A DNA stretch of 64,000 bases from Styela clava (GCF_964204865.1 NC_135259.1:7192001-7256000), one strand, 5' to 3'. Positions 8,951 to 43,350 are shown, counted from the stretch's first letter. Numbers and translations: made by a program. The notes: a model not told the origin generated them from the letters alone.

Positions 8951-10348
8951 ATGCCGGGTCGTGAGACAGAACCTCTTGTTACACTGCCATTGCAAGGCGA
9001 CTACAATGACGAATACAATGACGAATACACAACGCCCGTGTCAGAATCTGATATGGAAGCAACCACTCCATCAAAGTTAATTTCAAGAAAAGAACCTCAA
9101 AGCAACATATCACTATGGGATGACACTGACGTTAGACAAAAGCTGCTTCTTATGGATTTGATGCTAATGGATTTCCTAACGTTATTTTCAAGTAGCATAC
9201 CGAGTCCATTTTTTTCGCGGATAGTAATCAAAAGAGGGGGCTCGATATTGTATTCTGCTCTCATACTCCAAAGTTTGATGTTGTCCTTTTCAATTTGTTG
9301 TGTAATTTTCGGTAAATATCTCCCTTCTATGGGAATCAAGAAAATGTTTGTCGGCGGATTGGCAACATTTGGCTTGTGCCAAGTTATATTCGGATTATTG
9401 CATTTTGTTATGGATATCAAAGCATTTACAGGATTAGGAATATTGATACGTGTCTTCCAAGGAGCTGGAGAAGCTGCATTTGCAATATCTTCCATGAGTG
9501 TAATGTGTGAGGAATATCCAGCCCACATTACCAAAGTTTTTGGATTTACAGAAGCTATGGTTGGGGTAGGTTATCTTATGGGACCAATTTTTGGAGGTGG
9601 GATGTTTGACACTTTAGGCATGCTACTGCCTTTGGTACTTTCGGGAGGTATAGTCATATTAGCTATACCATGTCATTTCTTTTTGTTGCGGCCATACACA
9701 CACGAGGAAAATGCAGAAAGTGGGGAGTTCAATGTATTGGATTGGTTATCTAATCCTTACATAATTTCTGTTTTGTGTTCAGTGGCCACCGTGTTCGGAA
9801 CATTTGGATACATTGATGTTGCAATTACTACTTACTTAGAAAAACTTGGATTTACTGCCACAACTGTAGGATTGGTTTTGTTCACCGTCGGGCTAAGTTA
9901 TTGCATTGCAGCAGCTTTGATAGGATATATTGTTAGTTTCAAAGTATGGGTGAGAAAAGTATCTATGACTGTTGGATTCATCGGGTTTTCTTTAGTCCTG
10001 ATGGTGTATGTTCCAAAGCAATTGACGTCCTTAATTTATGTTGGATCGTCCGCACTGGGTATATTTGGCGCCCTAGGCACGGTACCTGCTTTTGAAGATT
10101 TGTTGCCAAGTGACCCTAGCTTAGAAATACATAGTGCAATTTCGGGTGCTTGGTATGGTTGCATCGGACTCGGCATGTTCGTTCTGCCACTAATAGGCTC
10201 TGCAATTCACAAAGTTTTGCATTCATTTTCGTGGGCTCTGTTTGTATCATCTTGTATAGGATTTGCAATTACTCTGATTTTAGCTGGATTGGTATACTTC
10301 ATAAAAAGAGTCAAAAGTTCGTCACATTTAAACGATCTGGTTGATTAA
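8951..10348 (+). CDS. MFS transporter, SLC18B1-like, intronless, 465 aa
   Basis: About 12 hydrophobic segments. Motifs resemble SLC18B1 (PFFSRIVIKRG, FGKYLPSMGIKKMFVGG, IRVFQGAGEAA, GFTEAMVGVGYLMGPIFGG). Acidic N-tail with a dileucine-like ETEPLV. Confidence 0.88.
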   Translation: MPGRETEPLVTLPLQGDYNDEYNDEYTTPVSESDMEATTPSKLISRKEPQSNISLWDDTDVRQKLLLMDLMLMDFLTLFSSSIPSPFFSRIVIKRGGSILYSALILQSLMLSFSICCVIFGKYLPSMGIKKMFVGGLATFGLCQVIFGLLHFVMDIKAFTGLGILIRVFQGAGEAAFAISSMSVMCEEYPAHITKVFGFTEAMVGVGYLMGPIFGGGMFDTLGMLLPLVLSGGIVILAIPCHFFLLRPYTHEENAESGEFNVLDWLSNPYIISVLCSVATVFGTFGYIDVAITTYLEKLGFTATTVGLVLFTVGLSYCIAAALIGYIVSFKVWVRKVSMTVGFIGFSLVLMVYVPKQLTSLIYVGSSALGIFGALGTVPAFEDLLPSDPSLEIHSAISGAWYGCIGLGMFVLPLIGSAIHKVLHSFSWALFVSSCIGFAITLILAGLVYFIKRVKSSSHLNDLVD

Positions 10349-28866: not shown

Positions 28867-29432
28867 TATCCAATTCCGCTTGAATTCGAGTACTAATATA
28901 CGCGTACATCGGCAATCGGGTCTACCTGGGATTGTTGGCCGAATGCTTATCAGTTAATCTACAAATTACGCAGAGGTTTTGTGATGGATATAGCAGCGGA
29001 TTAGTTTTCCAGCGCCGGATTAAAACAATATATATATATTTCTCTTCACCACCCTCCTTGTCGCTGTCTAATCATAAAAACATATGCATATTTATGTGAA
29101 ATTAAATTATTAATTTAGGGTGAAGAATTGGGCGATTGCTATTATTTGATATATACAAACTGGCGCTCACCCTATATTCCGCTTACATACAAATATGGCA
29201 AGCTAATTTGATTCATTAACTCAACTTGCAACGTGTGATTTATTCCGTATTTTGCCTACGTAACTTCTGGTTGCAGTGCGAAATGAACAAACGTTATAAT
29301 TTATTTTAGTACCTCTTTAATTCACGTACAAACAAAAATACGTAATAAAAATACGTTTAACAACTACTACACAGTAAAAACCCAAATCCGTATAAACAAA
29401 TACAAATTTATTCCAACATTTTCTTCTTGAGA

Positions 29433-30611
29433 TTATGGTGGAGACAGCTTAGCAACGATCTCCAAGGTGTAAGTTTTTATATCTCTTTGTTTTGACAATC
29501 CACCAATCGAAGTCAGATACATAGGTGTGGAACGAAAAGCATTAGCAATTGCAATGTGGATGTAAGATTTTCTATCAACTTTGACCTGTAAAATTAAAAT
29601 GAATTTGAAAGTGTCATTGGAAATAACAAAATCTCATGGCAGTTTTGCCCTTTGTAGTGAATAACTAAAAATGTACATGCATATTTAAAAATAGGGGATT
29701 TAAAAGCATTATTTAAAAGTCTCGTCAGAGTTACATTGTACTATTGGGCAAAAACTATCCTCATCCATAGCCCATCTTGATCGAGGTTGAGAATCGTCTA
29801 CCACCAGGACAACATCTTCTTTCTTGAAATTTCTCTAACCATAAATTGAATAGATTTTACTGACGAGTATGTTTGCCTATTTTTGATTTAATTACCTTGG
29901 CTATAATAATATTTTCATCTTCCACCGATAGCCTGAACGATTTTGTAGAAAATATCGAAAACGTTTCGTTCAATTCCACTTGCGATTCAGAAAGAAACTG
30001 TAATGAATAACAAGCAACAAAGAATTACTTTAAATTTAAAATTAAATAAAGATCATTTTATGAACGACGAATTGGGCTAGAAACCGGGTGTTTTGTTTAC
30101 TCAATATGAAATAAATTTACTTTCAGCAGTCTATTAACAAAATTAACCATTCTGTCCCACAGTATAAGAAAGAATAGATCGAAACAGGTTTTCCTTTGTT
30201 AAGGTCAGGATAACAATTGAGAAAGGATCTTGCTTGTGTGTATAAAGTCCAAGGTTTCCATTTCCTAAGCCCCATCAACATCTATTAGCCCCAGCTATGT
30301 ACTTCATTTTCTTATCAATAATCACCCACTCCCGTAAATCAAAACGATTGTTTTTATTTCAATTCCGATTATATAATTACTTTCTTTAACCGTTAAAAGA
30401 AAATTTCAAGTGCGGTTAACACTTTTTTTTTATATTTAGGATATGAATTTTATACTATTACACTCACCTTAGATACAATATCGTTCACTACTGATCCATT
30501 TCTGTTAACTATCGGTGAGATGGTATATCGAGCTGCAGAACTGATTGAAATCGTATGTAATAAAACGATTCCTACTAGAACAACGCACCCGAGGTATTTA
30601 GAGCAAAACAT
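29433..30611 (-). CDS. Secreted stefin/cystatin-like protein 1 (132 aa, 3 exons, no QxVxG)
   Basis: complement(join(29433..29585,29896..29997,30468..30611)): MFCSKYLGCVVLVGIVLLHTISISSAARYTISPIVNRNGSVVNDIVSK|FLSESQVELNETFSIFSTKSFRLSVEDENIIIAK|VKVDRKSYIHIAIANAFRSTPMYLTSIGGLSKQRDIKTYTLEIVAKLSPP*. Phase-0 introns, 102-nt middle exon, AATAAA just downstream. Confidence 0.8.
29750..29836 (-). mobile_element. Short BEL/Pao LTR-retrotransposon pol fragment (DUF5641-like) in an intron
   Basis: Translates RNFKKEDVVLVVDDSQPRSRWAM, matching the Pao post-integrase pattern RNLxxGDxVLxxDxxxPRxxWxLG. Confidence 0.6.
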
Positions 30612-31801
30612 CGCTACTTTTGTTCGTTCCACGTCCTGGCTGGTATGTGGTCAAGGTCACGGAGAGCTAGAATTTATTTTCATATACTTTGATAAAATTA
30701 TTTAAAGTTCACTAAGATTCCAGTGTAAATAATGCTAATTGATCGTATCTAAATAAACATTCCGAACTCTAATTCCTTCTTATCACTGAAATTCATTCAT
30801 GCGCTACCTTCTTAGACTTCGTCTTGTGGAGTCATGAGGAGGCAAATAGTTACATTTACTAGGTAATTCAAGTTAAACTACTTCTACTGTCAGTTATTCT
30901 TTCATTTCACCAATTGTCCATCTAAATAGCTCATGCCAAATTGTAAGGGTACGTGTAATAGGATTAATGGAACTCCGAAAATGTCATTGCCAAATTATAA
31001 ACATTAGAGGTTCACCTCATACATCTTCTCATGCAGCTTAACGGATCGTTCAACGTCACGAGCTATTGTTACGGCGGCTATTTGTAAGATAGTCTTGGCG
31101 TGAGTAATAATAGTATGTTGATGTGAAGAAATTGCAATGTGCAGATATAGTATGAGATAATCGCATGATAAACTTGGCTCGATGAAATCTAGGTACAAGT
31201 TTTACGTTTCAATTTAGTTATAATTCCAGGCATAAATGAATAACAGTATTAATCTTCAAGTGTTTTTAATCAAAAAAATTCACGATTTGTCTTCAGGCTT
31301 TCAGAAAATGTTTTCAAGAGCATGTACATAAGGATTGTTTTGGTATTATGTTGTTGGCATAAGTTTTTTATTGTCAGATTTAAAGTCTATTTTTCAAACT
31401 TTTAAACTATTATAGCTGCCTTAATTTTCAGCAATGTTAGCGGCCTAATAAAGTTTAGGTGATGTTTTGGAAAACGGAAATATCGTTCTATCCATTGTCG
31501 CATTCCAAACTCGTCAATACTGTATCCTATACTCAACGCTGTATATAACTCGCTATAACTTTCTCACACCACCATAATTCATAAGTATCAGAAAAATATT
31601 AATAATACTCCACTAATTACCAATACAAAAGAAAATATTTATTTTTCCATTTAATACACAAACCAACTACAACAAAAACACACTAATGTAAAAAGTACAT
31701 AATTATGAGGTTGTGAAGAAAAATGTTGTAAAGATACCGAAAAATATACAGGTTTATATTAAACCAAATATGATCTTTTGCAAAAATGACAATTGTTTTA
31801 A

Positions 31802-32913
31802 TTATTCCCGAGGTCGAAGAGTCGCAGTAACTTCTAGGATGAAATCTTTTGAACCAATATATTTGATGGAAGTAAGATAAGTAGGAGAATCGAAAGTTTC
31901 TCTGATTGCCATATTGATGTATCGTCGCCTACCAACTTGGATCTGAAAATAAAACGAGAAAATATAACGCCTTAAAGTAAACTGTATGGACTTTTGTCAA
32001 CTCAGATGAAATGGTATCACATACTAACCTACGAGTAAGTCCTAGGTATTCAGGCTTAGTTTCGGGACAATTAGAATAATATGATTGTCGAAGCGTTGTG
32101 CATATAAATATTTCAAATAATCTTAAGCTCACGACGGCTCACGACTCAAGGTTTAGTGGAACGTTCTTTCTTGCTAAATTCATTAATGATGAAGGAAATG
32201 ACATACGTATATATGAGAATAATTTTACCAATTATGATTCTAACGTTACTATTTTTTTGTATAAAATGATTCGTCAAAGTAGAAGAAATCACCTTGACTA
32301 AGATAATGTCGTAATCTTCAATTGCTCTTTGATAAGATTTAGCAACAAACATTGTCGAAAAATTGTCATTGAGGTCATCTTGCGCTTCTTTGATGAACTG
32401 AAAATAAATAAAACCAAGTCATGTTCGGTGAATATTAAAATAAAATGAATGCTTTTGGCGCCTTCATAGTATGTGCACCAAGATGGCGGACACCGGAGGT
32501 TAGAGTTAGTGCATAATTTTATTCTAATTTCCCTTATTTTAGTTATATTACAAGTTCGGGAACTAGCCAAGTGACTCCCGTAGTGTTTGTACCTGAAATT
32601 ATGGCCTAACTCTAACCTGTTGGTACACATACTGCGCTATCTTGGTGCACATACTACATGAGTACCATGCTTTTTGTTAGTCATTACCCACAGAGAACAG
32701 ATGGCATTACTGTAATAAGAACCTAATTCACGAAAGACTGGGCCTAAAATCCCAATTAAATCGAATAGTTTGCTAAAACTAGCTTACTTTTTGAACGGTC
32801 TTCTGATATCGAGCTCCATTGGTGTCTCTGAATCCAGAAATTGTGTAGGTTGTGGCAAATACTGAAGAGACAGAAAGTCCAATCACCACCAGAAGGAATG
32901 CAAAGTAGTTCAT
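31802..32913 (-). CDS. Secreted stefin/cystatin-like protein 2 (123 aa, 3 exons, no QxVxG); not in the ORF track as a whole
   Basis: complement(join(31802..31942,32293..32397,32788..32913)): MNYFAFLLVVIGLSVSSVFATTYTISGFRDTNGARYQKTVQK|FIKEAQDDLNDNFSTMFVAKSYQRAIEDYDIILVK|IQVGRRRYINMAIRETFDSPTYLTSIKYIGSKDFILEVTATLRPRE*. Clear paralog of 29433..30611; TATATAAG at 33000..32993. Confidence 0.82.
32457..32666. mobile_element. MITE related to family B in intron 1 of stefin-like gene 2
   Basis: GG...CC termini, inverted tagtatgtgcaccaagat / atcttggtgcacatacta, perfect 8-bp TSD ATGCTTTT. Confidence 0.82.
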
Positions 32914-34190
32914 CTTGTTTCTTCGTTTTTGTTTGTACTCACGATTTTGCTTGACTGAAAACTTATATATGTAATCTTGCTTTGTCGCTTTGCTTATATA
33001 CTACGAAACCATTAAAAATGTTTAATTTTCTAACAATCAGATAAATATGGCCCATTGAAAATTTACACATGAAGACTGTCATTATTCATGGCTTATACTT
33101 GTCTAACTTAGAACTTGAGTTGATAGAAAAATAAAATTTTACCATACACGTGTTAATTTCAGCGACAACACTCTACGAGTAAGTATACTAGGATATATAT
33201 TCTGAATATATGTATTCATGTTCAGTTCATACATGAATGTAGCCTAAACTAGGCTTAAATTAAAAATAAGCTTAGTCGAATATGGTTATTAATTGTAATA
33301 CTTTGACCATAAGAAGGTTGGACTTACGCTAATATTGCGAAGAGTCAATGTATATGTGTTAATTGTCTTCTAATGCATATAAAACAAATAGTGAATATTC
33401 ACATCCAGTAAATAAATCATGTGTCCTCTCGCCGCGCGCGAACGTGATATAAATCTTAACATAAATCTTCTTGTCTAGCAGCGACTTCTTTGAATTTTTA
33501 ATGACACTTGGTCGTCTTTTGTTAAATGAGTCGAGTATACAACGAACCCATACAAAACACATAATATTAATGTGGAAACCTCTGTAGAACATAGTTCCAG
33601 TAAAATACCTCAGACTGTTTAGCATTGTCAAAATTTCGGGCCGTGACTCGTAACTGAGATGTACAAAGCCGAAGCAGTGTGTAAAGGTGTACAGCGGTTT
33701 CAATATTCGAAATAGTTTAACGTGTTTGCGTTTTCAAATTATTTTGCAAATCTGTGCAATTGTCACTATTTCTTTCATTCCGAATAGTAGAGTATTTTGT
33801 ATATTGGTAAATGACCCATGTTAGGTATATCTCATAAACTGCTTGAGTACCGACAACAGTACTTACTATACGCCACCCTTGTGACGCAATTTTAGAAGAC
33901 CCAAAATAGTTCAATAGTAATTATATATATTCATTGAGGTTTACAAGTTATCGCTAGAGTGCCTATTGGTGCCATTGATTTTGAAGCAAATCACAGCCCT
34001 TATGTTAAACTTTACCCTTACGTGAATTACGGGTTTCCAATTATACGATACAATTTGGCTACATTATGGAGAAGTAAAGAGTTATGGGCACCCTAACTTC
34101 AGCAAACGTTGACGATATGTTCATATCAATAAACATAATTTAGGTTATTATTTCTTCGTATCTTGACCCCTTACTTTCAATGACATATAT

Positions 34191-34949
34191 CAGGGTGGTC
34201 CAAGGTTGCTCGGTTGAAGGGCCGCAAAAACTTTTGAGAGGGTCTCGCGGGCCGCAGTCGGAGAAAAACCCATGAGTGATCAAAATATCGCGAGTTTACT
34301 TACTTTAAATATATTAAATTAAAAAAAGAGAGTTTAGCGTTCTAATCGGCCGATTGTTATGTTACATGGGTGTTTTTTATTATTTTAAGGAAGATATATA
34401 AAGCATATAGTCATTTTAAAATTGCTTCCCGAGTAGTACCGTGGCATTTTCCGTAGCTTTTCTCGCGTTTGGTTTGGTAATGTTGCTTTAAATTATATTG
34501 TTTCGTGACAGATATTATTTTAATTATAGCACACCGTTGCGGGCAAGGAAATACGTTTCCTCTCAGTTTTCCTCTGTCACTTGTCCTTCAAGACTCCTTT
34601 TATGATGAATTGTTTTATTTGACTAATTTTATAACTTGCAGGGGCCTAGTGCTATCGTCAAAGAACAACCAAGTCAGTCTAAGTTGGGATTTCGATGCCT
34701 AGCTAAAAAAAAATGGATTGCGCCGCGCTTAGTCAGCTATGCGTTCCGTCACTGCGGTCACATGGCCCACGCTTGAAAATAGAGGAATTCATTTTCCATA
34801 TATCGATCACAGAACCTCACTCCCGTATCGGCACCCTAGATACAACATTGAAATTGGATTAGTATACGCTAAAGGTAAAATTGTTCAGTCCGCCCGGAAT
34901 GTGTTCGCGAGTCGCATGCAGACCGCGTGCCAGGGTTTGGACCACCCTG
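34191..34949. mobile_element. Non-autonomous hAT element
   Basis: Perfect 13-bp TIR CAGGGTGGTCCAA / TTGGACCACCCTG with GGGCCGCA subterminal motifs; TSD not preserved. Confidence 0.75.
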
Positions 34950-35844
34950 AGTCTTATATATATATATACGTTAACTTTTAAACCAGACCATTATTCCAAT
35001 TTTTGTTTCATTATTTTACAACCATTTTGTTCGCGTTATGCTGATTATTTGAAATTGGATTTGTTGTTCATGGCTTTCATACGACCGTGTCCATGCATCT
35101 GATTTTATTTGAACTAAGCCTCTTATTTTCAGGATGAAATTCTGTCCTATAAATAGGTTTTATTTTATTTCAAAGTCAGGAAAGTTAGAGAATTTCAAAC
35201 CACTCGCTTCAGCATTGTCCTATCATTAATGTTTCCTCAGACATATAATTTATTGTTAATATATATTCAATATGTTAAACAAGAGAGAAATTGAAAACTT
35301 TACAAATACTCACTCACTACATCAGAAAACGCACATGTGCTTAGTAAATGCAGATACAACAAAGCGCATCTCATCGTTTTATATTGAAAAGCCTATCTAT
35401 ACTCGTGTTGTGATTTTATAAGGTACATTCAGTTCATGTTTACATTTTGGTTATTTTTTCCTTGTGAATTTTGATGCAATGAGGAGTTTGAAAATAGTGT
35501 GCGTTCTATTTTCTTGCCATTTGTAAGAATGTCGATGTTGAAAATGTAGTCGCATAAAAAACGATCCTCAGGATGTAAAAAAAATTAGATTGATTCTAGA
35601 TCCGAACACCGGAAAAATCAAATTATGGTAACACAAACTTTGGCGTGTGGCGAGCCCGCATTACCATCACTGGAAGTATATATCACTTCAGTGAATTAAA
35701 TTATAAATCCTGGCGGTTTGTAAATAAGACTTGCCAAAATCTGGTTCATTTACTACTTTGTAACGCAATGAAACGCGATTTATCCATTGAGTGGTATAAA
35801 CAATATTGGGATAATATGCTTAATATTTAGAATGGGAGAGAGAG

Positions 35845-35990
35845 AAGCTGGCCATATGGTGTACCACGGCCTTTCGTCCGATTACCTGCCTAGGTTGGGT
35901 ATGGGCTAGCTAGCCTGGTGTTGTTTATTTCAGGTACATACACTTAATGGTAGGGGATGCTGTAACCGATAGGCGACCGACCTTTATTAT
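35845..35990 (-). mobile_element. Decayed 3' fragment of a tRNA-derived SINE
   Basis: The reverse complement resembles 41755..41870 (gtaaccggac...gccgt.gtac.ccat). Confidence 0.55.
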
Positions 35991-36113
35991 AATTTACTCC
36001 TCCGAATAAACTTTGAAAAAATATTTTTGAATCTAGAATATATATTTTTTAAATCCGTCTATGGGCCGAAAGATAATCTAATAGGCTGTTGCACTCATAT
36101 CGAGGCCTCTAAG

Positions 36114-36945
36114 CAAGGCTGGATTAACCATTAAGCAGTATAAGCACGTGCTTAGGGAACCAAATCTTCAATGTTACCTCAGTGTTAGATGAGGTAATTC
36201 GCGTTGGTCAGGCAACACGGATTTCAATATTGAACCGGTTGAAATAAATCTGTGCATATTATTTTTCCACAAGTATCATCTGAAACCTTCTATAAATGTT
36301 TGTAGGCATGACAAATATTTAAAAAAAAAAAAAGGCAAATTAATCATAACTTGTCCCTCAGTTAGTAGCGAAAGAATGTTTCCTCGACCATTGCCCCCTA
36401 AAAAATTCTCCCCATACTTTACTACTGCAAAAAATTATGCTTATTTTGAGAGTGTTCTGGAGAGTGGGCACTTACAATTTGGTTAACATGTTCAAAAACA
36501 TAATTTTTCATTATTTACATCAACTATTTGATCACATCTTGGGCTAGTCTGTCGCAGCGTTTGCGGGACTGATGTTTGATTATTTCAACTAAACTAAAAG
36601 CTTTTAGGAAAATGACTAATGACTATCATGTTATTTGATTTAGAACTTGTTTTTGAAAACACAATTGAAACTGACAAATAAAGTACAAAACAACGAAAAC
36701 AAACCGACGCTTACAACGGTGGTTATCAGACTGAGCGGTTGGACAAATTGGAATTGTTTCGTCATTGCTGATTGGTAATTGTTACGGAAATAAACAAAGA
36801 AATCGATTCTCGTGGAAACATTCACACTGACACTTACTTATTCAATTTCAGATAACATGGAACGTTTTTATAAATATTACTTTCCATATATATGGCACCA
36901 AAGTCGTAAGTACTTAGGTCCCATGAAAGGCACAATCCGACCCTC
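36114..36945. mobile_element. Decayed hAT-type MITE
   Basis: Termini CAAGGCTGGATT / AATCCGACCCTC with CTTAGG subterminal motifs; flanks partly match (cctctaag / gttctaat). Confidence 0.55.
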
Positions 36946-39049
36946 GTTCTAATCACTCAATGTATAAAACACTGTCGAATGATGCCTGGTGGAGCATGTC
37001 CCATTAAACCCCGGGCAATTGTTCTTCAAAGCATCGAAGATTTTTAGACTGCTCCGTGTCAAGAATACACTTGCCAACGTTATGAATATTTTACACTGGA
37101 CTAAGGGCAAAGGGTAATATGCCAGGCAGTAGTTTGTCCTGTTGTAAAGTATATATTCAAAAAAAGAAAAAAGAATATGGCAAAATGTTAGTTTCAACCG
37201 TTCAAAACCAATTCAATCTAATCTCATAGCTTGCATTGCTCTGCGATGTCAAATACCGAAACTCATTACTGATTCCGGATAAAGTATGAGTGTGAGTATT
37301 GATTTTCCATTGTGCCTCATGTCCCCATATACTTAACATGAGGACCAGCACTGTTATTTCAGTTTTCTTCTTTAGACGCAAAACTGATTTTTTAAGATTC
37401 CTTGTATCAATTGCCAGGGATGTAGCCTAGTATTTATAGAAAGTGGATTTCTTTAGTATGTTTTTGCTTACTCAGCATCACCTGGAGTTGTTTTTCTGAG
37501 TTGTTTGGTCAGCACGTAAGGTTAAGAGCAACCCTACCACGCATTAGGCTGATGCTGCTCAAAGCGTATGTTGGAAAGAAGTGGCATCAAATGCACGGGA
37601 GAAAACTGTCAGTTCTTGGATTGTATAATGCTTGTTGAGAATTGCTCTGATCATGAAGAAAGTGTGAGTTAGACAACAACTAGTATCATCCCTTGTGTGA
37701 CTATGATGACAAAAAAAATCTCCATGTTGTCCGAGCACAAATTCTATGTCATTGGCTACTTAGCTGATTTTGTTGCTAGGTTACGAAACAAAGAGGACTT
37801 GTCACCAGGAGTAGGAGTCCAATTTCTCTCAACTCGGATTCGATTGTAAACTTTCCTCGACTCGACAAGCCTAGTTGAAAATAATTGCCATTCTTATGCA
37901 TCGTAAACTTATCAATATTTGGAAAAAAATTATTTTTGTGATTACCGGTATATATTTTTCGTTTCTAACAATGCATATGTTTTGATTATAAAATTTGAAA
38001 TGCAACAGTTTACAGTTATTCTTTATAACATTTGAACTTTGAACTCTCCTGTTCGATTAAAATTATTGAATTCATATTGAAGGGACTCATTATGAATATA
38101 AATTAAGTTGAATAAAATCATCCATAGAAAGTAATAATCATCTCTGTTTGTCATATGAATCTCATTATTAAACCGCATTAAGTAGGTCGTAAAATAAATT
38201 ATGGACAGTTTAGTTTTGGAATGAGAAACCAATTCAACTTTATACAAATGCACGAAAAAAATATATAGTTTATTTATATTATAATAAGACGCTTAAAGTC
38301 ATCGATATATTTTTAACAATTTTTGATCCGCGAATTTTAGAATTGTAATAATAAAAAAAAACGAATGAAAGAGAAGATTTTATATTACTATTTTTGATAC
38401 CCTCAAAATTGCCTCGAACCAGTTGTGTGTTTTACAACAGGAAAAATACAGTATTTTGCATGCGCAAAATACAATATAGACACACAGTATTTGAGTCTGG
38501 GCAAGCCCGATAAGCATTATTATTACGTAACAAATGCAAGTTTTTCCGCTGCCGGGGTTTAAAAATGAAGTGCCAAAAATCGCGTGTCCAAATCCAGACT
38601 GACAAATGATCCTACAATAACTTCCGCAGTATGCATTAGTTATTGTCTCACTCCAAAAGTAGTGTGATAAATTTTATTCGCAATGGTAGCAGTAGCATCA
38701 AAATGCCCGATTTGTTCTAATTCTAAGCAAGCGAAGAATCGCGTTTGGAGGAAATTGTAAATTAGATACTGAAGTTGAGCAGTCATGTAACATTCATGGT
38801 TTGAGAATATTTATTTTTTGCTCATGGGGTGACACATGAATACTTAACACTTACGACTAAAAATTAGGCACGCCCTTTTTCCGAATTGTATTATTTAAAT
38901 AAATCTTAAATAAATGATGAAACATTTACTCCGGGTACAATTAAATATTCAAATCAACAACTTAAATGGAACATAAGAAATACAAGTTGTGTATGTGCAT
39001 GTGCAGTTATCTGCACATTTAGTGTCCATTCGTTTTTGTGTAGGACCTT

Positions 39050-39124
39050 ATTACCGATCAGTCGATCGCGATCTATGTTGAAGATTTTAGTCGATCGCGA
39101 TCGGAAGCAGGTTGGCCACCCCTG
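39050..39124. mobile_element. Solo hAT terminus
   Basis: GTCGATCGCGATC repeats followed by GGTTGGCCACCCCTG and a hAT-like target (atatagac). Confidence 0.5.
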
Positions 39125-39731
39125 ATATAGACCAAACGACAATTGCATTATTGCGGACTTGGCGAGCTCTCTAATCAATCGCAAATATATTATAATTTAT
39201 CCACGAGTAATAAAATGTTGTTATTTTGAATGTGATTGTGCTGAATATTCCAGAAAATATCGTTGTTTTCACACCGAGATCTTAAATTACTTCCTCTTCC
39301 ACTATTTCCATCTATTGATGGGCATCAACTAAAAGCCCTCGAGGCAGTTCAGCTGCATTCAAAGCATTTATTTAATTGCCCGTATTGAAGATAATTAACC
39401 AACCGTGCGACGATCATTTCGAATATGAAGGTGTACAACTTTTTTAGAAGTTAAATAAAGTTCATCATAAATAATAAATCATTATTTCTCCTGTTTGAAA
39501 CTCGATCAAGCTCTTTTGTGAGAGGGTCCATGCTTACATTATGGATATACACATAAAAGGCATTCAACGGTGAAAATCATTCCTCTCTTTGAAGGATTTT
39601 ATTGTATAACACCATGGATATATTGCTGCTAATTTTAATTTTGTAGCACGTAATTTACTACGTGCCAAACTATAAACAAGATATTTCTAATTTTTTTTAT
39701 TTGTGCCATAAACGTGTCTTAGATGTGCGAA

Positions 39732-39738
39732 TATAAAA
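39732..39738 (+). promoter_or_regulatory. TATA box of stefin-like gene 3
   Basis: TATAAAA 95 bp upstream of the ATG at 39827. Confidence 0.5.
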
Positions 39739-39826
39739 GCCCAATGACTTATGTTCATGCACACTTTTGATCTGAGACTCGATTTGGAAGTTATTGGCCG
39801 CTGTTAAAATAAAAAAAAACTCAAAA

Positions 39827-40602
39827 ATGCAGTCGTCCTTGGTAGTTTTGTTGTGCCTGGTAGCTTGCATTTCACTGACGAACGCTTTTACAATTTATAC
39901 TTTTGGCGATAGGGTTCAAATTCAAAAGAAAGATACGGTGGATACCATTGCTGATTCCGTAAGTACATCTCATAATGTATTCAATCCAATTTAAAATACG
40001 GAAAATTTTTAAGAGTAGTTACAATACTCAATCCAATTGTTTTTAGTTGAAACAAGAACTTCAAATAATGAATGGTGAGAAATACGGAAAGAAAAAATGG
40101 GACCCCAGAATTTACAGAACATCACGCCAAAATACCAACGTAATTTGGATGAAGGTTAGTAAATTTTCACCTTTATGGTAACATTCCTTATTAGGTATTG
40201 AACAAACCAGATTGTTACTAGGATTTTAATGAATTCACAAATGCATAACACTTATTGAGGTTAGTAACGCTGTGCTTAGGTGATCTGTCAAAAAATTCTG
40301 ATCACTTTGAGTAAGTACATTACAATTCACAAGGTGATGCGTGTATTTCACCGACGTTTGCAGTTGGATTTTAAATATAGATCCGATGTATTAGTTATTA
40401 AACGTAATGCAACACAACTTCAATATTTCGTTCTGAGGTTGAATGATGAAATATTATTTTCCCTTTACAGATCAAAGTTGATCACAAGAAATTTCTTGGA
40501 GTTGTCATCGAAGACGCTTACTCTGGTTCACCTAATATTATTGAATGTGAAGTCGGATACGACAGAAATATGGGAATGAAAACAGGAGCTTTAATTCTCT
40601 AA
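39827..40602 (+). CDS. Secreted stefin/cystatin-like protein 3 (123 aa, 3 exons, no QxVxG)
   Basis: join(39827..39958,40047..40154,40471..40602): MQSSLVVLLCLVACISLTNAFTIYTFGDRVQIQKKDTVDTIADS|LKQELQIMNGEKYGKKKWDPRIYRTSRQNTNVIWMK|IKVDHKKFLGVVIEDAYSGSPNIIECEVGYDRNMGMKTGALIL*. IADS|LKQEL parallels stefin B IADQ|VRSQL. Confidence 0.8.
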
Positions 40603-42189: not shown

Positions 42190-43350
42190 CACCGATTCTC
42201 TCAGTGGGCCATGGCCCACATGAACATTTTCAGGTGGGCCAGAAACCAATTTAAAAAAATGCTGGAGTTAAAATTAGTATAATTTGATTGGAGTAGCAAT
42301 TAATGATAATGCTATTTTGGGGAATTGAGTGGTAAAATTTTCATTAAAAAAATTCAATTGTCTATTTTTGGCGAAAAGGATTTTTTGATTCTCTTGTATA
42401 GTTTCACTTTCATGAGAATGTGGACGGGCCACAAAAAACATAGCACGTGTAGTAATCGAATATAAATGAAACTGAAGTGTGAGTCTACAGAATCATTGCC
42501 AGTGTCTGCAGTGGTCATTGATTAAAAAGTCAAGGAACGTTAAATTTAGCAAAATGGATGAATTTTTAAAAAGAACATCCGAAACATCTAATACTGAGCA
42601 ACATATTGTACCTAGCACAAGCAACGTTGAAAAGAAAAAAAAACTTATCAAATAGGAATACAGGGAAGATTACATTAAATATGGATTTTTTTGTTGTGGT
42701 AACGAAGATGCTACAAATTCAGTCTGCGTTATTTGTGGGGAGTAACTTTCAAATAAAGCAATGGGTAAACTTATGCGCCACTTAAATCCGAAATACGGTT
42801 TCGTGTCAAATTTGACGAAAAAGCACTTAACTCTAATACAGCAAAGATAAGTACTGGTACTTTTTCGCAAATAACAATGAACGATACGACTGGATCCGAA
42901 ATCCTTTCTCAACTAGTGCTGAACTGTCAACGAAAGAAATACCCCTGCGTATTAGAGAAAATTTCTTCGAAGTATAAAAATGACAGAACGCTAAGACTCA
43001 AATTCGGTGAAATTCCACTTGATGTGTTTTGGATTTCAATAAAAGAAGAATATAAGCGCACATTTCCAATGCAGCTATTGAAATATTGCACCAGTTTTGC
43101 ACAACTTATGTGTGCAAACAAAGCTTTTCCTATTTAATACTGATCAAAAACAATAAACGATCCTGCATAAAAGATGTTGACGGCGACCTTCGAGTTGCTC
43201 TTCCACGTATTGATCCTAATATAAAGCGATTGTACTCATTAAAACAACCACAAATCTCTCAGTGAAATATATATGAACTTAAAACAAAGTTACACTTCGT
43301 TTTTCTCGTTTATGAGTGTGCCGTAAGTTAAAAAAGATTGCGGAGCACTG
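42190..43350 (+). mobile_element. Internally deleted hAT (Buster/Charlie-type) element with transposase pseudogene
   Basis: BED finger relic YREDYIKYGF...VCVICGE*LSNKAMGKLMRHL is joined to a C-terminal dimerization-domain relic (FWISIKEEY ... FCTTYVCKQSFSYL ... DLRVAL ... PNIKRL). Stops and frameshifts are present and the DDE core is missing. Ends GATTGCGGAGCACTG. Confidence 0.85.

What the first reader, a model, noticed from the sequence alone, without database searches (positions are those of the whole stretch)
29433..40602. Cluster of three secreted, stefin-derived proteins that lost the protease-inhibitory loop
Seen: three 3-exon genes (29433..30611 -, 31802..32913 -, 39827..40602 +), invisible as whole ORFs. 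Each encodes 123-132 aa with an N-terminal signal peptide, a shared YT(I/F) just after it, two phase-0 introns, a 102-108 nt middle exon ending in K, and a last exon starting (V/I)(K/Q)V(D/G). Known: type-1 cystatins (stefins A/B) are cytosolic, lack signal peptides, have phase-0 introns at IADQ|V and YFIK|V around a 102-nt exon, and inhibit papain-family cathepsins through QVVAG. The alignment holds: VNDIVSK|FLSESQVELNETFSIFSTKSFRLSVEDENIIIAK|VKVDRKSYIHIAI vs stefin A [54 protein letters not shown]. QVVAG is replaced by SVEDE, AIEDY and SRQNT. Inference: a lineage-specific family that reuses the stefin fold as a secreted scaffold with a new function (immune, antimicrobial, tunic/matrix or non-papain enzyme binding).
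Basis: partly seen in the sequence, partly recalled or inferred. Interest (0 to 1): 0.85.

Follow-up and report, generated by a model that had tools for sequence, protein, structure and literature searches.

The report
Secreted stefin-derived proteins lacking inhibitory loop
Three neighbouring genes of the sea squirt Styela clava encode small secreted proteins that descend from the cell-internal protease inhibitor stefin but have lost its protease-binding motif, so an old inhibitor fold seems to have been reused outside the cell for an unknown job.

Summary
All three 3-exon genes exist at the stated coordinates, with GT..AG introns in phase 0. They match the Styela clava RefSeq models LOC120337348, LOC120337351 and LOC120337352, all named "uncharacterized protein". 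Contigs from runs the tool guesses to be RNA show all four splice junctions of genes A and B at the predicted bases.

The stefin origin is also supported. A profile of the three proteins has only stefin A/B as its seven best hits in the Protein Data Bank (E from 1.1e-3). It aligns to a true S. clava stefin, P0010, with hhalign probability 95% (P 3e-8). Intron positions and the 102-nt middle exon match S. clava's own stefin genes. The AlphaFold model of gene C matches stefin structures best (Z 10.7). Pfam itself finds nothing.

QxVxG is replaced by SVEDE, AIEDY and SRQNT, and the N-terminal Gly-Gly is gone.

One thing is new. S. clava also has a secreted stefin with an intact reactive centre (P0010), and the trio scores closer to it than to the cytosolic stefin. 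This suggests the order: signal peptide first, loop loss later.

Function, secretion and loss of inhibition are inferred, not shown. No relatives were found outside S. clava, but that search was weak. The scan had no earlier cystatin note in this genome.

The parts
30468..30611 (-). Gene A (LOC120337348) exon 1: start codon, signal peptide, YTIS motif, start of the helix (48 aa)
   Evidence: translation, GT donor. RNA-type contig joint 29997/30468. Identical to P0007.
29896..29997 (-). Gene A exon 2, 102 nt (34 aa): helix end, strand beta2 and the L1 hairpin, where SVEDE stands in place of QxVxG
   Evidence: Joints on both sides. hhalign register against P0010's QVVSG. Same length and phase as exon 2 of the S. 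clava stefin genes.
29433..29585 (-). Gene A exon 3 (50 aa plus stop): VKVD..., strands beta3 to beta5, retained L2 proline, C-terminal extension
32788..32913 (-). Gene B (LOC120337351) exon 1 (42 aa): signal peptide and YTIS motif
   Evidence: Joint 32397/32788. Identical to P0002.
32293..32397 (-). Gene B exon 2, 105 nt (35 aa): AIEDY in place of QxVxG
31802..31942 (-). Gene B exon 3 (46 aa plus stop): IQVG..., PTYLTSI block
39827..39958 (+). Gene C (LOC120337352) exon 1 (44 aa): signal peptide and FTIYT
   Evidence: Identical to P0009. No read evidence was laid here.
40047..40154 (+). Gene C exon 2, 108 nt (36 aa): SRQNT in place of QxVxG. In the AlphaFold model the hairpin loop is residues 71-75, between strands 63-70 and 76-82
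40471..40602 (+). Gene C exon 3 (43 aa plus stop): IKVD...

Best explanation
The three genes are a Styela clava paralogue cluster of type-1 cystatin (stefin) descent, and at least A and B are transcribed and spliced.

Each encodes a precursor of about 125 aa. A cleavable N-terminal signal peptide would leave a basic mature domain of about 12 kDa, free of disulfides, with the cystatin fold: one helix packed on a curved antiparallel sheet.

The likely history has three steps. First, a stefin gained a signal peptide by extension of exon 1; S. clava still carries such a gene with an intact reactive centre, 'cystatin-A-like' P0010 on another chromosome-scale contig. Second, a copy of that secreted type moved to this locus. 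Third, it duplicated into A, B and C, while the protease-binding edge was rewritten. The N-terminal Gly-Gly became YTIS/FTIY. The L1 motif QxVxG became SVEDE, AIEDY or SRQNT. Only the proline of L2 remains.

With two of the three contact segments changed, they are most likely no longer tight inhibitors of papain-family cathepsins. They probably act outside the cell as small binding proteins whose rewritten edge recognises another, still unknown, partner.

Shown here: gene structure, splicing of A and B, homology to stefins, and replacement of the motifs. Predicted: the fold. Inferred: secretion, the order of events, loss of inhibition, and a new binding function.
For: Gene models and RefSeq identity. 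Splice joints in RNA-type contigs, some at k-mer depths in the thousands.

Homology to stefins:
- The profile of the three proteins against PDB sequences gives stefin A/B as all of the top 7 hits, E 1.1e-3 to 0.08, profile positions 37-94 against stefin 15-71.
- hhalign against P0010: probability 95.1%, P 3.1e-8, 60 columns.
- The mature-region HMM scores mature P0010 at 31.2 bits; the best of 10,000 shuffles is 10.1. It scores the cytosolic S. clava stefin at 10.6 bits, reached by 2 of 10,000 shuffles.
- BLASTP: C against P0010 E 3e-7; A against P0010 E 6e-5.
- P0010 is itself a true stefin: PF00031 at 27.3 bits and stefin A at E 6e-12.

Gene structure: both introns fall in the same alignment columns and the same phase as in P0010 and the cytosolic stefin. 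Exon 2 is 102 nt in both stefins and in gene A.

Fold:
- The ESM Atlas model of C has pTM 0.71, and its nearest structure cluster is cystatin-B-like (TM 0.61 by query, 0.77 by target). Features of A and C are nearest to the cystatin-A clusters.
- The AlphaFold model of C has pLDDT 71.7. Foldseek's top hits are stefin B, stefin A and the stefin scaffold SQT-1C, each with probability 1.0.
- VIA-align gives SQT-1C Z 10.7 (rmsd 2.3 over 88 residues) and CsStefin-1 Z 9.2. Seven of the eight best rows are named cystatins.

Signal peptide: 10-residue hydrophobic cores with Kyte-Doolittle means of 3.1-3.5, followed by small-residue cleavage motifs. The mature parts have 0-1 Cys and pI 9.2-9.5.
Against: - Pfam's cystatin model does not match any of the three, whole or by exon.
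- All Foldseek E-values are above 0.01.
- The AlphaFold model of A is poor (pLDDT 52.7). It gave only generic alpha+beta-roll matches, mixed with NTF2-like folds.
- The alignment used for the model of C contained the stefin P0010, which may bias it. The alignment-free ESM model agrees, however.
- Secretion rests on a heuristic. No signal-peptide predictor and no protein data were available.
- Loss of inhibition is inferred from motifs only. Atypical loops can still inhibit some proteases.
- Synonymous sites between the paralogues are saturated (pS about 0.7), so selection is barely measurable.
- No tissue or stage information could be obtained, because the run identities are coded.
Confidence: 0.72

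Rival explanations
1. They are still protease inhibitors with a changed specificity. One option is the 'back-side' asparagine loop between the helix and strand beta2, used against legumain, as in cystatins C, E/M and F and in the fluke stefin EnStef. Another is a particular endogenous or microbial cysteine protease that accepts the new L1 loop.
For: - The fold and the L2 proline are kept.
- A and B share an Asn (LNE / LND) 14 residues before the former QxVxG position, and C has one a residue earlier.
- A stefin with a working legumain site (S31-N-S33, 15 residues before Q47) is documented in PMC5727476.
- A and B conserve the pattern hydrophobic-E-D in L1, which suggests constraint rather than decay.
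Against: - The Asn context is not the S/T-N-D/S consensus quoted in PMC5727476.
- In A this Asn lies in an N-glycosylation sequon (NET), which would block binding if it is used.
- The same N-E-T occurs in human stefin A in the aligned hit, so it may simply be inherited.
- Acidic or polar L1 loops are unlike any reactive centre described in the papers read.
Confidence: 0.17
2. They are decaying duplicates of a secreted stefin gene with no function of their own, kept only by chance and transcribed as noise.
For: - The reactive-centre motifs are lost.
- Nothing was found outside this species.
- Gene A differs at 6 of 132 residues between two RefSeq versions.
Against: - All three reading frames and all six splice sites are intact, although synonymous sites are saturated (pS about 0.7). 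The duplications are therefore old.
- pN (0.41-0.55) is below pS.
- The core fold residues and blocks such as P-x-YLTSI are conserved between A and B.
- Spliced transcripts of A and B appear in several runs, at k-mer depths in the thousands for B.
Confidence: 0.05
3. The likeness to stefins is convergent or due to chance. The proteins would then be an unrelated lineage-specific family with a similar alpha+beta roll, NTF2-like or other.
For: No Pfam match. The poor model of A matched NTF2-like and VirB8-like chains as well as it matched cystatins.
Against: - Sequence-level significance against a true stefin.
- Only stefins at the top of the PDB sequence search.
- Identical intron positions and phases, and the same 102-nt exon.
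- The better model (C) matches stefins clearly above other folds.
Confidence: 0.03

Closest known systems
Classical stefins (type-1 cystatins, MEROPS I25A: stefin A/B; the S. clava cytosolic stefin on contig C3)
   Same: Single domain of about 100 aa with no disulfides. Same predicted fold. Same three-exon gene plan, with phase-0 introns around a 102-nt exon. They are the best sequence and structure matches.
   Different: Stefins have no signal peptide. They carry the N-terminal Gly(-Gly), QxVxG in L1, Leu-Pro in L2 and a C-terminal D/E-x-L-x-Y/H-F motif. The trio has a signal peptide and lacks the first two motifs. It keeps only the proline of L2 and a weak remnant of the C-terminal motif.
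S. clava 'cystatin-A-like' P0010, and the cystatin-like stefins (CyL-stefins, e.g. FhCyLS-2; PMC9986714)
   Same: Stefin architecture plus a signal peptide encoded in an extended exon 1. P0010 scores far higher against the trio's profile than the cytosolic stefin does.
   Different: P0010 and FhCyLS-2 keep Gly-Gly and QxVxG. FhCyLS-2 is a proven broad cathepsin inhibitor and has two disulfides. The trio has neither the motifs nor disulfides.
CRES-type cystatins (cystatin-related epididymal spermatogenic; PDB 6uio)
   Same: Secreted cystatin-fold proteins that lack the consensus sites for cysteine-protease inhibition (from general knowledge of the family). CRES is among the structural matches (Z 7.2; Foldseek rank 9).
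   Different: CRES proteins derive from type-2 cystatins and have their disulfides and central insert. The trio derives from type 1.
Monellin, SQAPI and ranaspumin-2 (cystatin fold reused for another function)
   Same: All are examples of the fold losing its ancestral role. Kordis and Turk 2009 (PMC2784779) cite monellin and SQAPI as such. SQAPI and ranaspumin-2 appear among the weaker structural matches.
   Different: They come from plants or a frog and arose independently, from phytocystatins or of unclear descent. No sequence relation to the trio was seen.
Engineered stefin-A scaffolds (SQT-1C, PDB 6qb2)
   Same: A stefin fold in which the protease-binding segments were replaced to bind other targets. 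It is the best structural match of the model of gene C (Z 10.7).
   Different: It is man-made. The likeness is an analogy for how the trio might work, not evidence that it does.

Membership tests
Cystatin superfamily (MEROPS I25; cystatin fold) | One alpha-helix packed across a curved, five-stranded antiparallel beta-sheet | tested here: met
   Prediction only. The AlphaFold model of C has a helix at 35-53 and strands at 63-70, 76-82, 88-94 and 102-109. Best matches are SQT-1C Z 10.7, CsStefin-1 Z 9.2 and multicystatin Z 8.5. Foldseek's top hits are stefin B and A, probability 1.0, TM by target 0.62-0.70. The ESM Atlas models of A and C are nearest to cystatin clusters. The model of A itself was too poor to decide.
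Cystatin superfamily (MEROPS I25; cystatin fold) | Significant sequence similarity to accepted members | tested here: met
   hhalign to P0010: probability 95.1%, P 3.1e-8. HMM score 31.2 bits against a maximum of 10.1 in 10,000 shuffles. BLASTP E 3e-7 and 6e-5. The PDB profile search has stefins only in its top 7.
Cystatin superfamily (MEROPS I25; cystatin fold) | Match to Pfam PF00031 above the gathering score | tested here: not met
   No PF00031 hit at E up to 10 for the whole proteins or the single exons. The genome-wide PF00031 scan found three other loci but not these.
Stefins (type 1, I25A) | Single domain of about 100 aa without disulfide bridges | tested here: met
   The mature parts are 103-105 aa, with 0 (A, B) or 1 (C) cysteine.
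Stefins (type 1, I25A) | No signal peptide; intracellular | tested here: not met
   N-terminal hydrophobic cores (Kyte-Doolittle 3.1-3.5 over 10 residues) are followed by the cleavage-type motifs SAA|R, VFA|T and TNA|F. This is a heuristic; no SignalP was available.
Stefins (type 1, I25A) | Conserved N-terminal Gly or Gly-Gly of the binding trunk | tested here: not met
   In the alignment with P0010 (PVPGGLS) and the cytosolic stefin (EVGGLS), the trio has TISPIV, TISGFR and TIYTFG. Only B keeps one Gly in that column.
Stefins (type 1, I25A) | Gln-x-Val-x-Gly in the first hairpin loop | tested here: not met
   SVEDE (A), AIEDY (B) and SRQNT (C) align with QVVSG / QVVAG. In the model of C the loop lies at the hairpin, residues 71-75.
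Stefins (type 1, I25A) | Leu-Pro in the second hairpin loop | tested here: inconclusive
   A proline is invariant in the trio at the L2 region (STP, SP, GSP). The leucine is absent, and the alignment with the true stefins is uncertain here.
Stefins (type 1, I25A) | C-terminal D/E-x-L-x-Y/H-F motif (as given in PMC9986714) | tested here: not met
   The S. clava stefins end in PIEYF and PIESF. The trio has TLEI, ILEV and ALIL in those columns, and A and B run on for 6-7 more residues.
Stefins (type 1, I25A) | Three exons, two phase-0 introns, 102-nt middle exon (as in S. clava's own stefin genes) | tested here: met
   The cytosolic stefin gene (L015) and the P0010 gene (L017) both have a 102-nt exon 2 and phase-0 GT..AG introns. 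A has 102 nt, B 105 and C 108, with introns in the same alignment columns.
Stefins (type 1, I25A) | Tight, reversible inhibition of papain-family (C1) proteases | not testable with these tools
   This needs recombinant protein and enzyme kinetics.
Cystatin-like stefins (CyL-stefins, PMC9986714) | Stefin architecture plus a secretion signal peptide | tested here: met
   The definition was read.
Cystatin-like stefins (CyL-stefins, PMC9986714) | Disulfide bridges and a competent reactive centre (Gly-Gly, QxVxG) | tested here: not met
   0-1 cysteine in the mature parts, and the motifs are replaced.
CRES-type non-inhibitory type-2 cystatins | Type-2 architecture with two disulfides and the central insert | tested here: not met
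   There are no cysteine pairs. The best sequence matches are stefins, not type-2 cystatins.

The most novel reading that the evidence does not exclude
S. clava shows a stepwise natural re-engineering of the stefin fold: cytosolic inhibitor, then secreted inhibitor (P0010), then a tandem trio whose three protease-contact segments were rewritten differently in each copy. The trio would then be natural counterparts of engineered stefin scaffolds, binding non-protease targets in immunity, tunic or matrix, or reproduction. That would be the first non-inhibitory secreted family of type-1 descent in a chordate.
Probability: 0.35. Interest if true: 0.62.

Novelty: new variant of a known kind. Interest (0 to 1): 0.5.

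Why it matters
Kordis and Turk 2009 (PMC2784779) describe stefins as the conservative arm of the cystatin superfamily: one or a few intracellular genes per genome. All the diversification into secreted and non-inhibitory proteins is credited to the type-2 arm.

Stefins with a signal peptide have so far been reported from parasitic flukes and myxozoans (PMC9986714) and from some protists (PMC2784779). Those that were tested still inhibit.

Here a free-living chordate holds three forms side by side: a classical stefin, a secreted stefin with an intact reactive centre, and a secreted trio without it. That gives a small, testable series for two questions. How does an inhibitor fold get exported? 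How is it then freed from its old function?

It also gives names and a testable hypothesis to three 'uncharacterized' RefSeq genes, at least one of which seems abundantly transcribed.

It does not open a new class of system. Cystatin-fold proteins that lost inhibition are known (monellin, SQAPI, CRES).

Tried and rejected
- **Pfam.** Scans of single exons and of the full proteins found nothing relevant. The weak hits to LYR and Schlafen are noise.
- **Word-index protein searches.** With A, with the exon-1 frame of the P0010 gene, and with P0010 itself, each returned only the query's own cluster. All three searches are spent, and no wider stefin set could be fetched as ids.
- **Exon-3 profile against 1.84 billion representatives.** It returned only the three proteins plus three long repetitive proteins (P0004-P0006), which I took as false positives without reading them. 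A 50-column profile is weak at that database size, so 'absent elsewhere' is not shown.
- **AlphaFold of A with three sequences.** The model was too poor. Foldseek found nothing, and VIA-align gave only generic alpha+beta rolls. I rejected this model as evidence either way.
- **dN/dS between paralogues.** Synonymous sites are saturated, so the result is barely informative.
I redid it from locus coordinates.
- **Spliced models.** I never typed a joined model into a search tool. Searches went exon by exon by reference, then used public protein ids identical to the models (P0007, P0002, P0009) or their allelic twins (P0001, P0003). Exons were joined only inside local scripts that read the window file.
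- **Complex prediction** was not used, because no specific partner is claimed.
- **A five-sequence tree** was considered and dropped. Without outgroup ids it cannot place P0010 relative to the trio.
- **Paper searches** for the locus and protein accessions and for Styela clava with cystatin found nothing on these genes.


Full report
**1. The observation**

I read the region on both strands and rebuilt the three models from the window file.

| Gene | Strand | Exon 1 | Exon 2 | Exon 3 | Protein |
|---|---|---|---|---|---|
| A | - | 30468-30611 | 29896-29997 (102 nt) | 29433-29585 | 132 aa |
| B | - | 32788-32913 | 32293-32397 (105 nt) | 31802-31942 | 123 aa |
| C | + | 39827-39958 | 40047-40154 (108 nt) | 40471-40602 | 123 aa |

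All six introns are GT..AG and lie between codons (phase 0).

A local tblastn shows that A and B are clear paralogues (E about 1e-5 per exon). C is a more distant one, and there is no fourth copy in the window. Whole-genome searches with exon 3 of A and with a profile of the three proteins found only these nine exons. The window is G000:C13:7192001-7256000 of a 377-Mb assembly.

**2. The genes are real and already annotated**

A profile of the three last exons (alignment A1) was run against 1.84 billion protein representatives. It returned three proteins of 132, 123 and 123 aa.

These are the Styela clava RefSeq proteins XP_039261051 (LOC120337348), XP_039261055 (LOC120337351) and XP_039261056 (LOC120337352). 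All are named 'uncharacterized protein'. One RefSeq version of each is identical to my model: P0007 = A, P0002 = B, P0009 = C. The other version differs at 6, 1 and 1 residues respectively.

From this point I used those public ids.

I laid contigs of four public runs on window 29300-33000. The tool only guesses that these runs are RNA. They show joints exactly at 29585/29896, 29997/30468, 31942/32293 and 32397/32788. One contig carries all three exons of A, and another all three of B. Some contigs of gene B have k-mer depths of several thousand in one run. That suggests abundant mRNA, although the tool warns that depth is a poor measure.

Gene C's junctions rest on the RefSeq model only.

No paper in the library mentions these loci, and none links Styela clava with a cystatin of this kind.

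**3. Are they stefin-derived?**

Pfam says nothing, whether for exons or for whole proteins. A six-frame scan of the genome with PF00031 hits three other loci but not these. Those three loci turned out to be the key comparison.

- **A classical stefin gene on contig C3.** Exon 1 has 25 aa, no signal peptide and a Gly-Gly. Exon 2 has exactly 34 aa and ends in QVVAGMNYFVK. Exon 3 starts VQVG. All introns are phase 0.
- **A stefin gene on C16 whose exon 1 starts with a signal peptide.** After the signal peptide it continues PVPGGLS. Its product is P0010, 'cystatin-A-like [Styela clava]', 125 aa. It passes Pfam's cystatin threshold (27.3 bits) and matches human stefin A at E 6e-12. It has QVVSG, no disulfide pair, a 102-nt exon 2 and phase-0 introns.
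- **A third locus (L004)** carries a QVVAG-bearing exon. I did not follow it further.

Tested against these and against solved structures, the trio shows the following.

- **Search of PDB sequences with the trio's profile (alignment A2).** The seven best hits are all stefin A or stefin B (E 1.1e-3 to 0.08).
- **Comparison with P0010 and the cytosolic stefin.**
  - hhalign of A2 against P0010 gives probability 95.1% and P 3.1e-8 over 60 columns. It puts SVEDE on QVVSG.
  - An HMM of the mature parts only scores mature P0010 at 31.2 bits. The best of 10,000 shuffles reaches 10.1 bits.
  - The same HMM scores the cytosolic stefin at 10.6 bits, reached by 2 of 10,000 shuffles.
  - Pairwise BLASTP gives C against P0010 E 3e-7, A against P0010 E 6e-5, and A against C E 3e-9.
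- **Gene structure.** In a joint alignment, both introns of all five genes fall in the same columns.
- **ESM Atlas.** It places A and C next to 'cystatin-A-like' and 'Cystatin A' clusters by features (0.88 and 0.85, leads only). Its own alignment-free model of C (pTM 0.71) is nearest to a cystatin-B-like cluster, with TM 0.61 by query and 0.77 by target over 90 residues.
- **AlphaFold model of C** (alignment A4; pLDDT 71.7, core 78-88). It has one long helix and four strands in cystatin order.
  - Foldseek's best hits are stefin B, stefin A, the stefin scaffold SQT-1C, the stefin B-papain complex and Dictyostelium cystatin A2. Probability is 1.0 and TM by target 0.61-0.70, though E is only about 0.02.
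  - The search independent of Foldseek gives SQT-1C Z 10.7 (rmsd 2.3 over 88 residues), CsStefin-1 Z 9.2 and multicystatin Z 8.5.
  - Further rows are tarocystatin, the secreted type-1 cystatin of Fasciola, CRES and sialostatin. Unrelated folds start at Z about 6.5.

There are caveats. The A4 alignment contained P0010, which may pull the model toward a stefin. The model of A (pLDDT 52.7) was useless and matched NTF2-like folds as well as cystatins.

Taken together, I consider homology to stefins established and the fold well supported.

**4. What changed**

*Signal peptide.* All three start with a hydrophobic core of 10-13 residues, too short for a membrane anchor. It is followed by small-residue cleavage motifs. 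The mature parts have 103-105 aa, pI 9.2-9.5 and 0-1 cysteine. A has two N-glycosylation sequons, B has one and C has none. This is a heuristic, not a predictor.

*Reactive centre.* The papers read here (PMC9986714, PMC5727476) define three contact segments.

| Segment | True stefins | A | B | C |
|---|---|---|---|---|
| N-terminal trunk | Gly-Gly | TISPIV | TISGFR | TIYTFG |
| L1 | QxVxG | SVEDE | AIEDY | SRQNT |
| L2 | Leu-Pro | STP (Pro kept) | SP (Pro kept) | GSP (Pro kept) |

In the model of C, the L1 stretch is still the tip of the first hairpin, residues 71-75 between strands 63-70 and 76-82.

The stefin C-terminal motif is reduced to L-E-hydrophobic, and A and B carry short extensions.

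A and B share a new conserved block, P-x-YLTSI, after L2, and the pattern hydrophobic-E-D in L1. This looks like a new constraint rather than decay, but identity is spread along the whole chain. I do not read a new site from it.

**5. History**

The trio's profile scores the secreted stefin P0010 far higher than the cytosolic one (31.2 against 10.6 bits). All four secreted genes carry the signal peptide inside a lengthened exon 1 (42-49 aa, against 25 aa in the cytosolic gene).

The simplest reading has four steps: one gain of the signal peptide, a copy moving from C16 to C13, tandem and inverted duplication, and loss of the motifs. This order is an inference. I could not fetch outgroup stefins to test it with a tree.

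Synonymous sites between the paralogues are saturated (pS about 0.7), so the duplications are old. pN is lower, at 0.41-0.55.

**6. Mechanism**

With two of three contact segments rewritten, two of the loops now acidic and one polar, tight binding in the active-site cleft of papain-family enzymes is unlikely. This is inference from the known binding mode of stefins.

I commit to small secreted binding proteins that use the rewritten edge of the fold for another partner. The engineered stefin scaffold SQT-1C is the best structural match, and it shows that the fold tolerates exactly this kind of replacement.

The rivals, in order of weight:
1. A retargeted inhibitor, for example of legumain through the conserved Asn behind the helix. 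A stefin with such a site exists (PMC5727476), but the sequence context differs, and in A the Asn lies in a glycosylation sequon.
2. Decaying duplicates.
3. Chance resemblance.

**7. Comparison with the known, and novelty**

Three things are already known:
- secreted stefins that still inhibit: CyL-stefins of flukes and myxozoans (PMC9986714) and some protist stefins (PMC2784779);
- cystatin-fold proteins that lost inhibition: monellin and SQAPI (PMC2784779) and CRES (PDB 6uio);
- stefins with an extra legumain site (PMC5727476).

The combination seen here was not found in the library: type-1 descent, a signal peptide, no disulfides and no reactive-centre motifs, as a tandem family in a free-living chordate. 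Kordis and Turk state that urochordates have only stefins and cystatins, and that stefins stay at one or a few copies.

I class it as a new variant of a known kind, of moderate interest.

Distribution outside S. clava is untested in practice.

The two notes near this place concern other genes.

Noticed in passing
L017:6594-7431 (-), = G000:C16 about 8,890,594-8,891,431; protein P0010: S. clava has a stefin with a signal peptide, an intact Gly-Gly and QVVSG, Q-P-W in the second loop, and no disulfide pair. It scores PF00031 at 27.3 bits and stefin A at E 6e-12. PMC9986714 reports signal-peptide stefins only from parasitic flukes and myxozoans, so a free-living chordate example is notable in itself.
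   Followed up: partly
window 32440-32660 (intron 1 of gene B): A dispersed repeat of about 190 bp with inverted ends of about 30 bp (MITE-like). The first look found 3,143 candidates in the genome, and the scored copies are 76-90% identical. It is extremely deep in the RNA-type contigs, with many loose ends and odd joints.
   Followed up: partly
window 8951-10348 (+): An uninterrupted ORF of 465 aa matches the Major Facilitator Superfamily (PF07690, E 2.7e-29). It appears to be an intronless transporter gene.
   Followed up: partly
window 29433-30611 (gene A): The two RefSeq versions of protein A differ at 6 of 132 residues (S4T, H19Y, R28Q, D44N, G110D, E124D). B and C differ at one residue each, inside the signal peptide. 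Gene A may be unusually polymorphic.
   Followed up: no
It holds a fully spliced gene B transcript that is almost identical to the window: 4 differences in 274 bases of exon 3 plus 3' UTR, and none in exons 1-2. Runs X6 and X7 of the same study hold similar small shares of the stretch's words. This is either a labelling matter or a very close relative that carries the gene.
   Followed up: no
L004 / L016, G000:C16 about 558,786-558,878 (-): A third PF00031-matching exon of the genome, with [12 protein letters not shown] (21.9 bits). Its other exons and its type (1 or 2) were not worked out.
   Followed up: no
window 42479-43137 (+): Two adjacent ORFs of 58 and 86 aa reminded me of transposase-derived (hAT-type) C-terminal regions. 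Pfam gives no match, so this stays a guess.
   Followed up: partly
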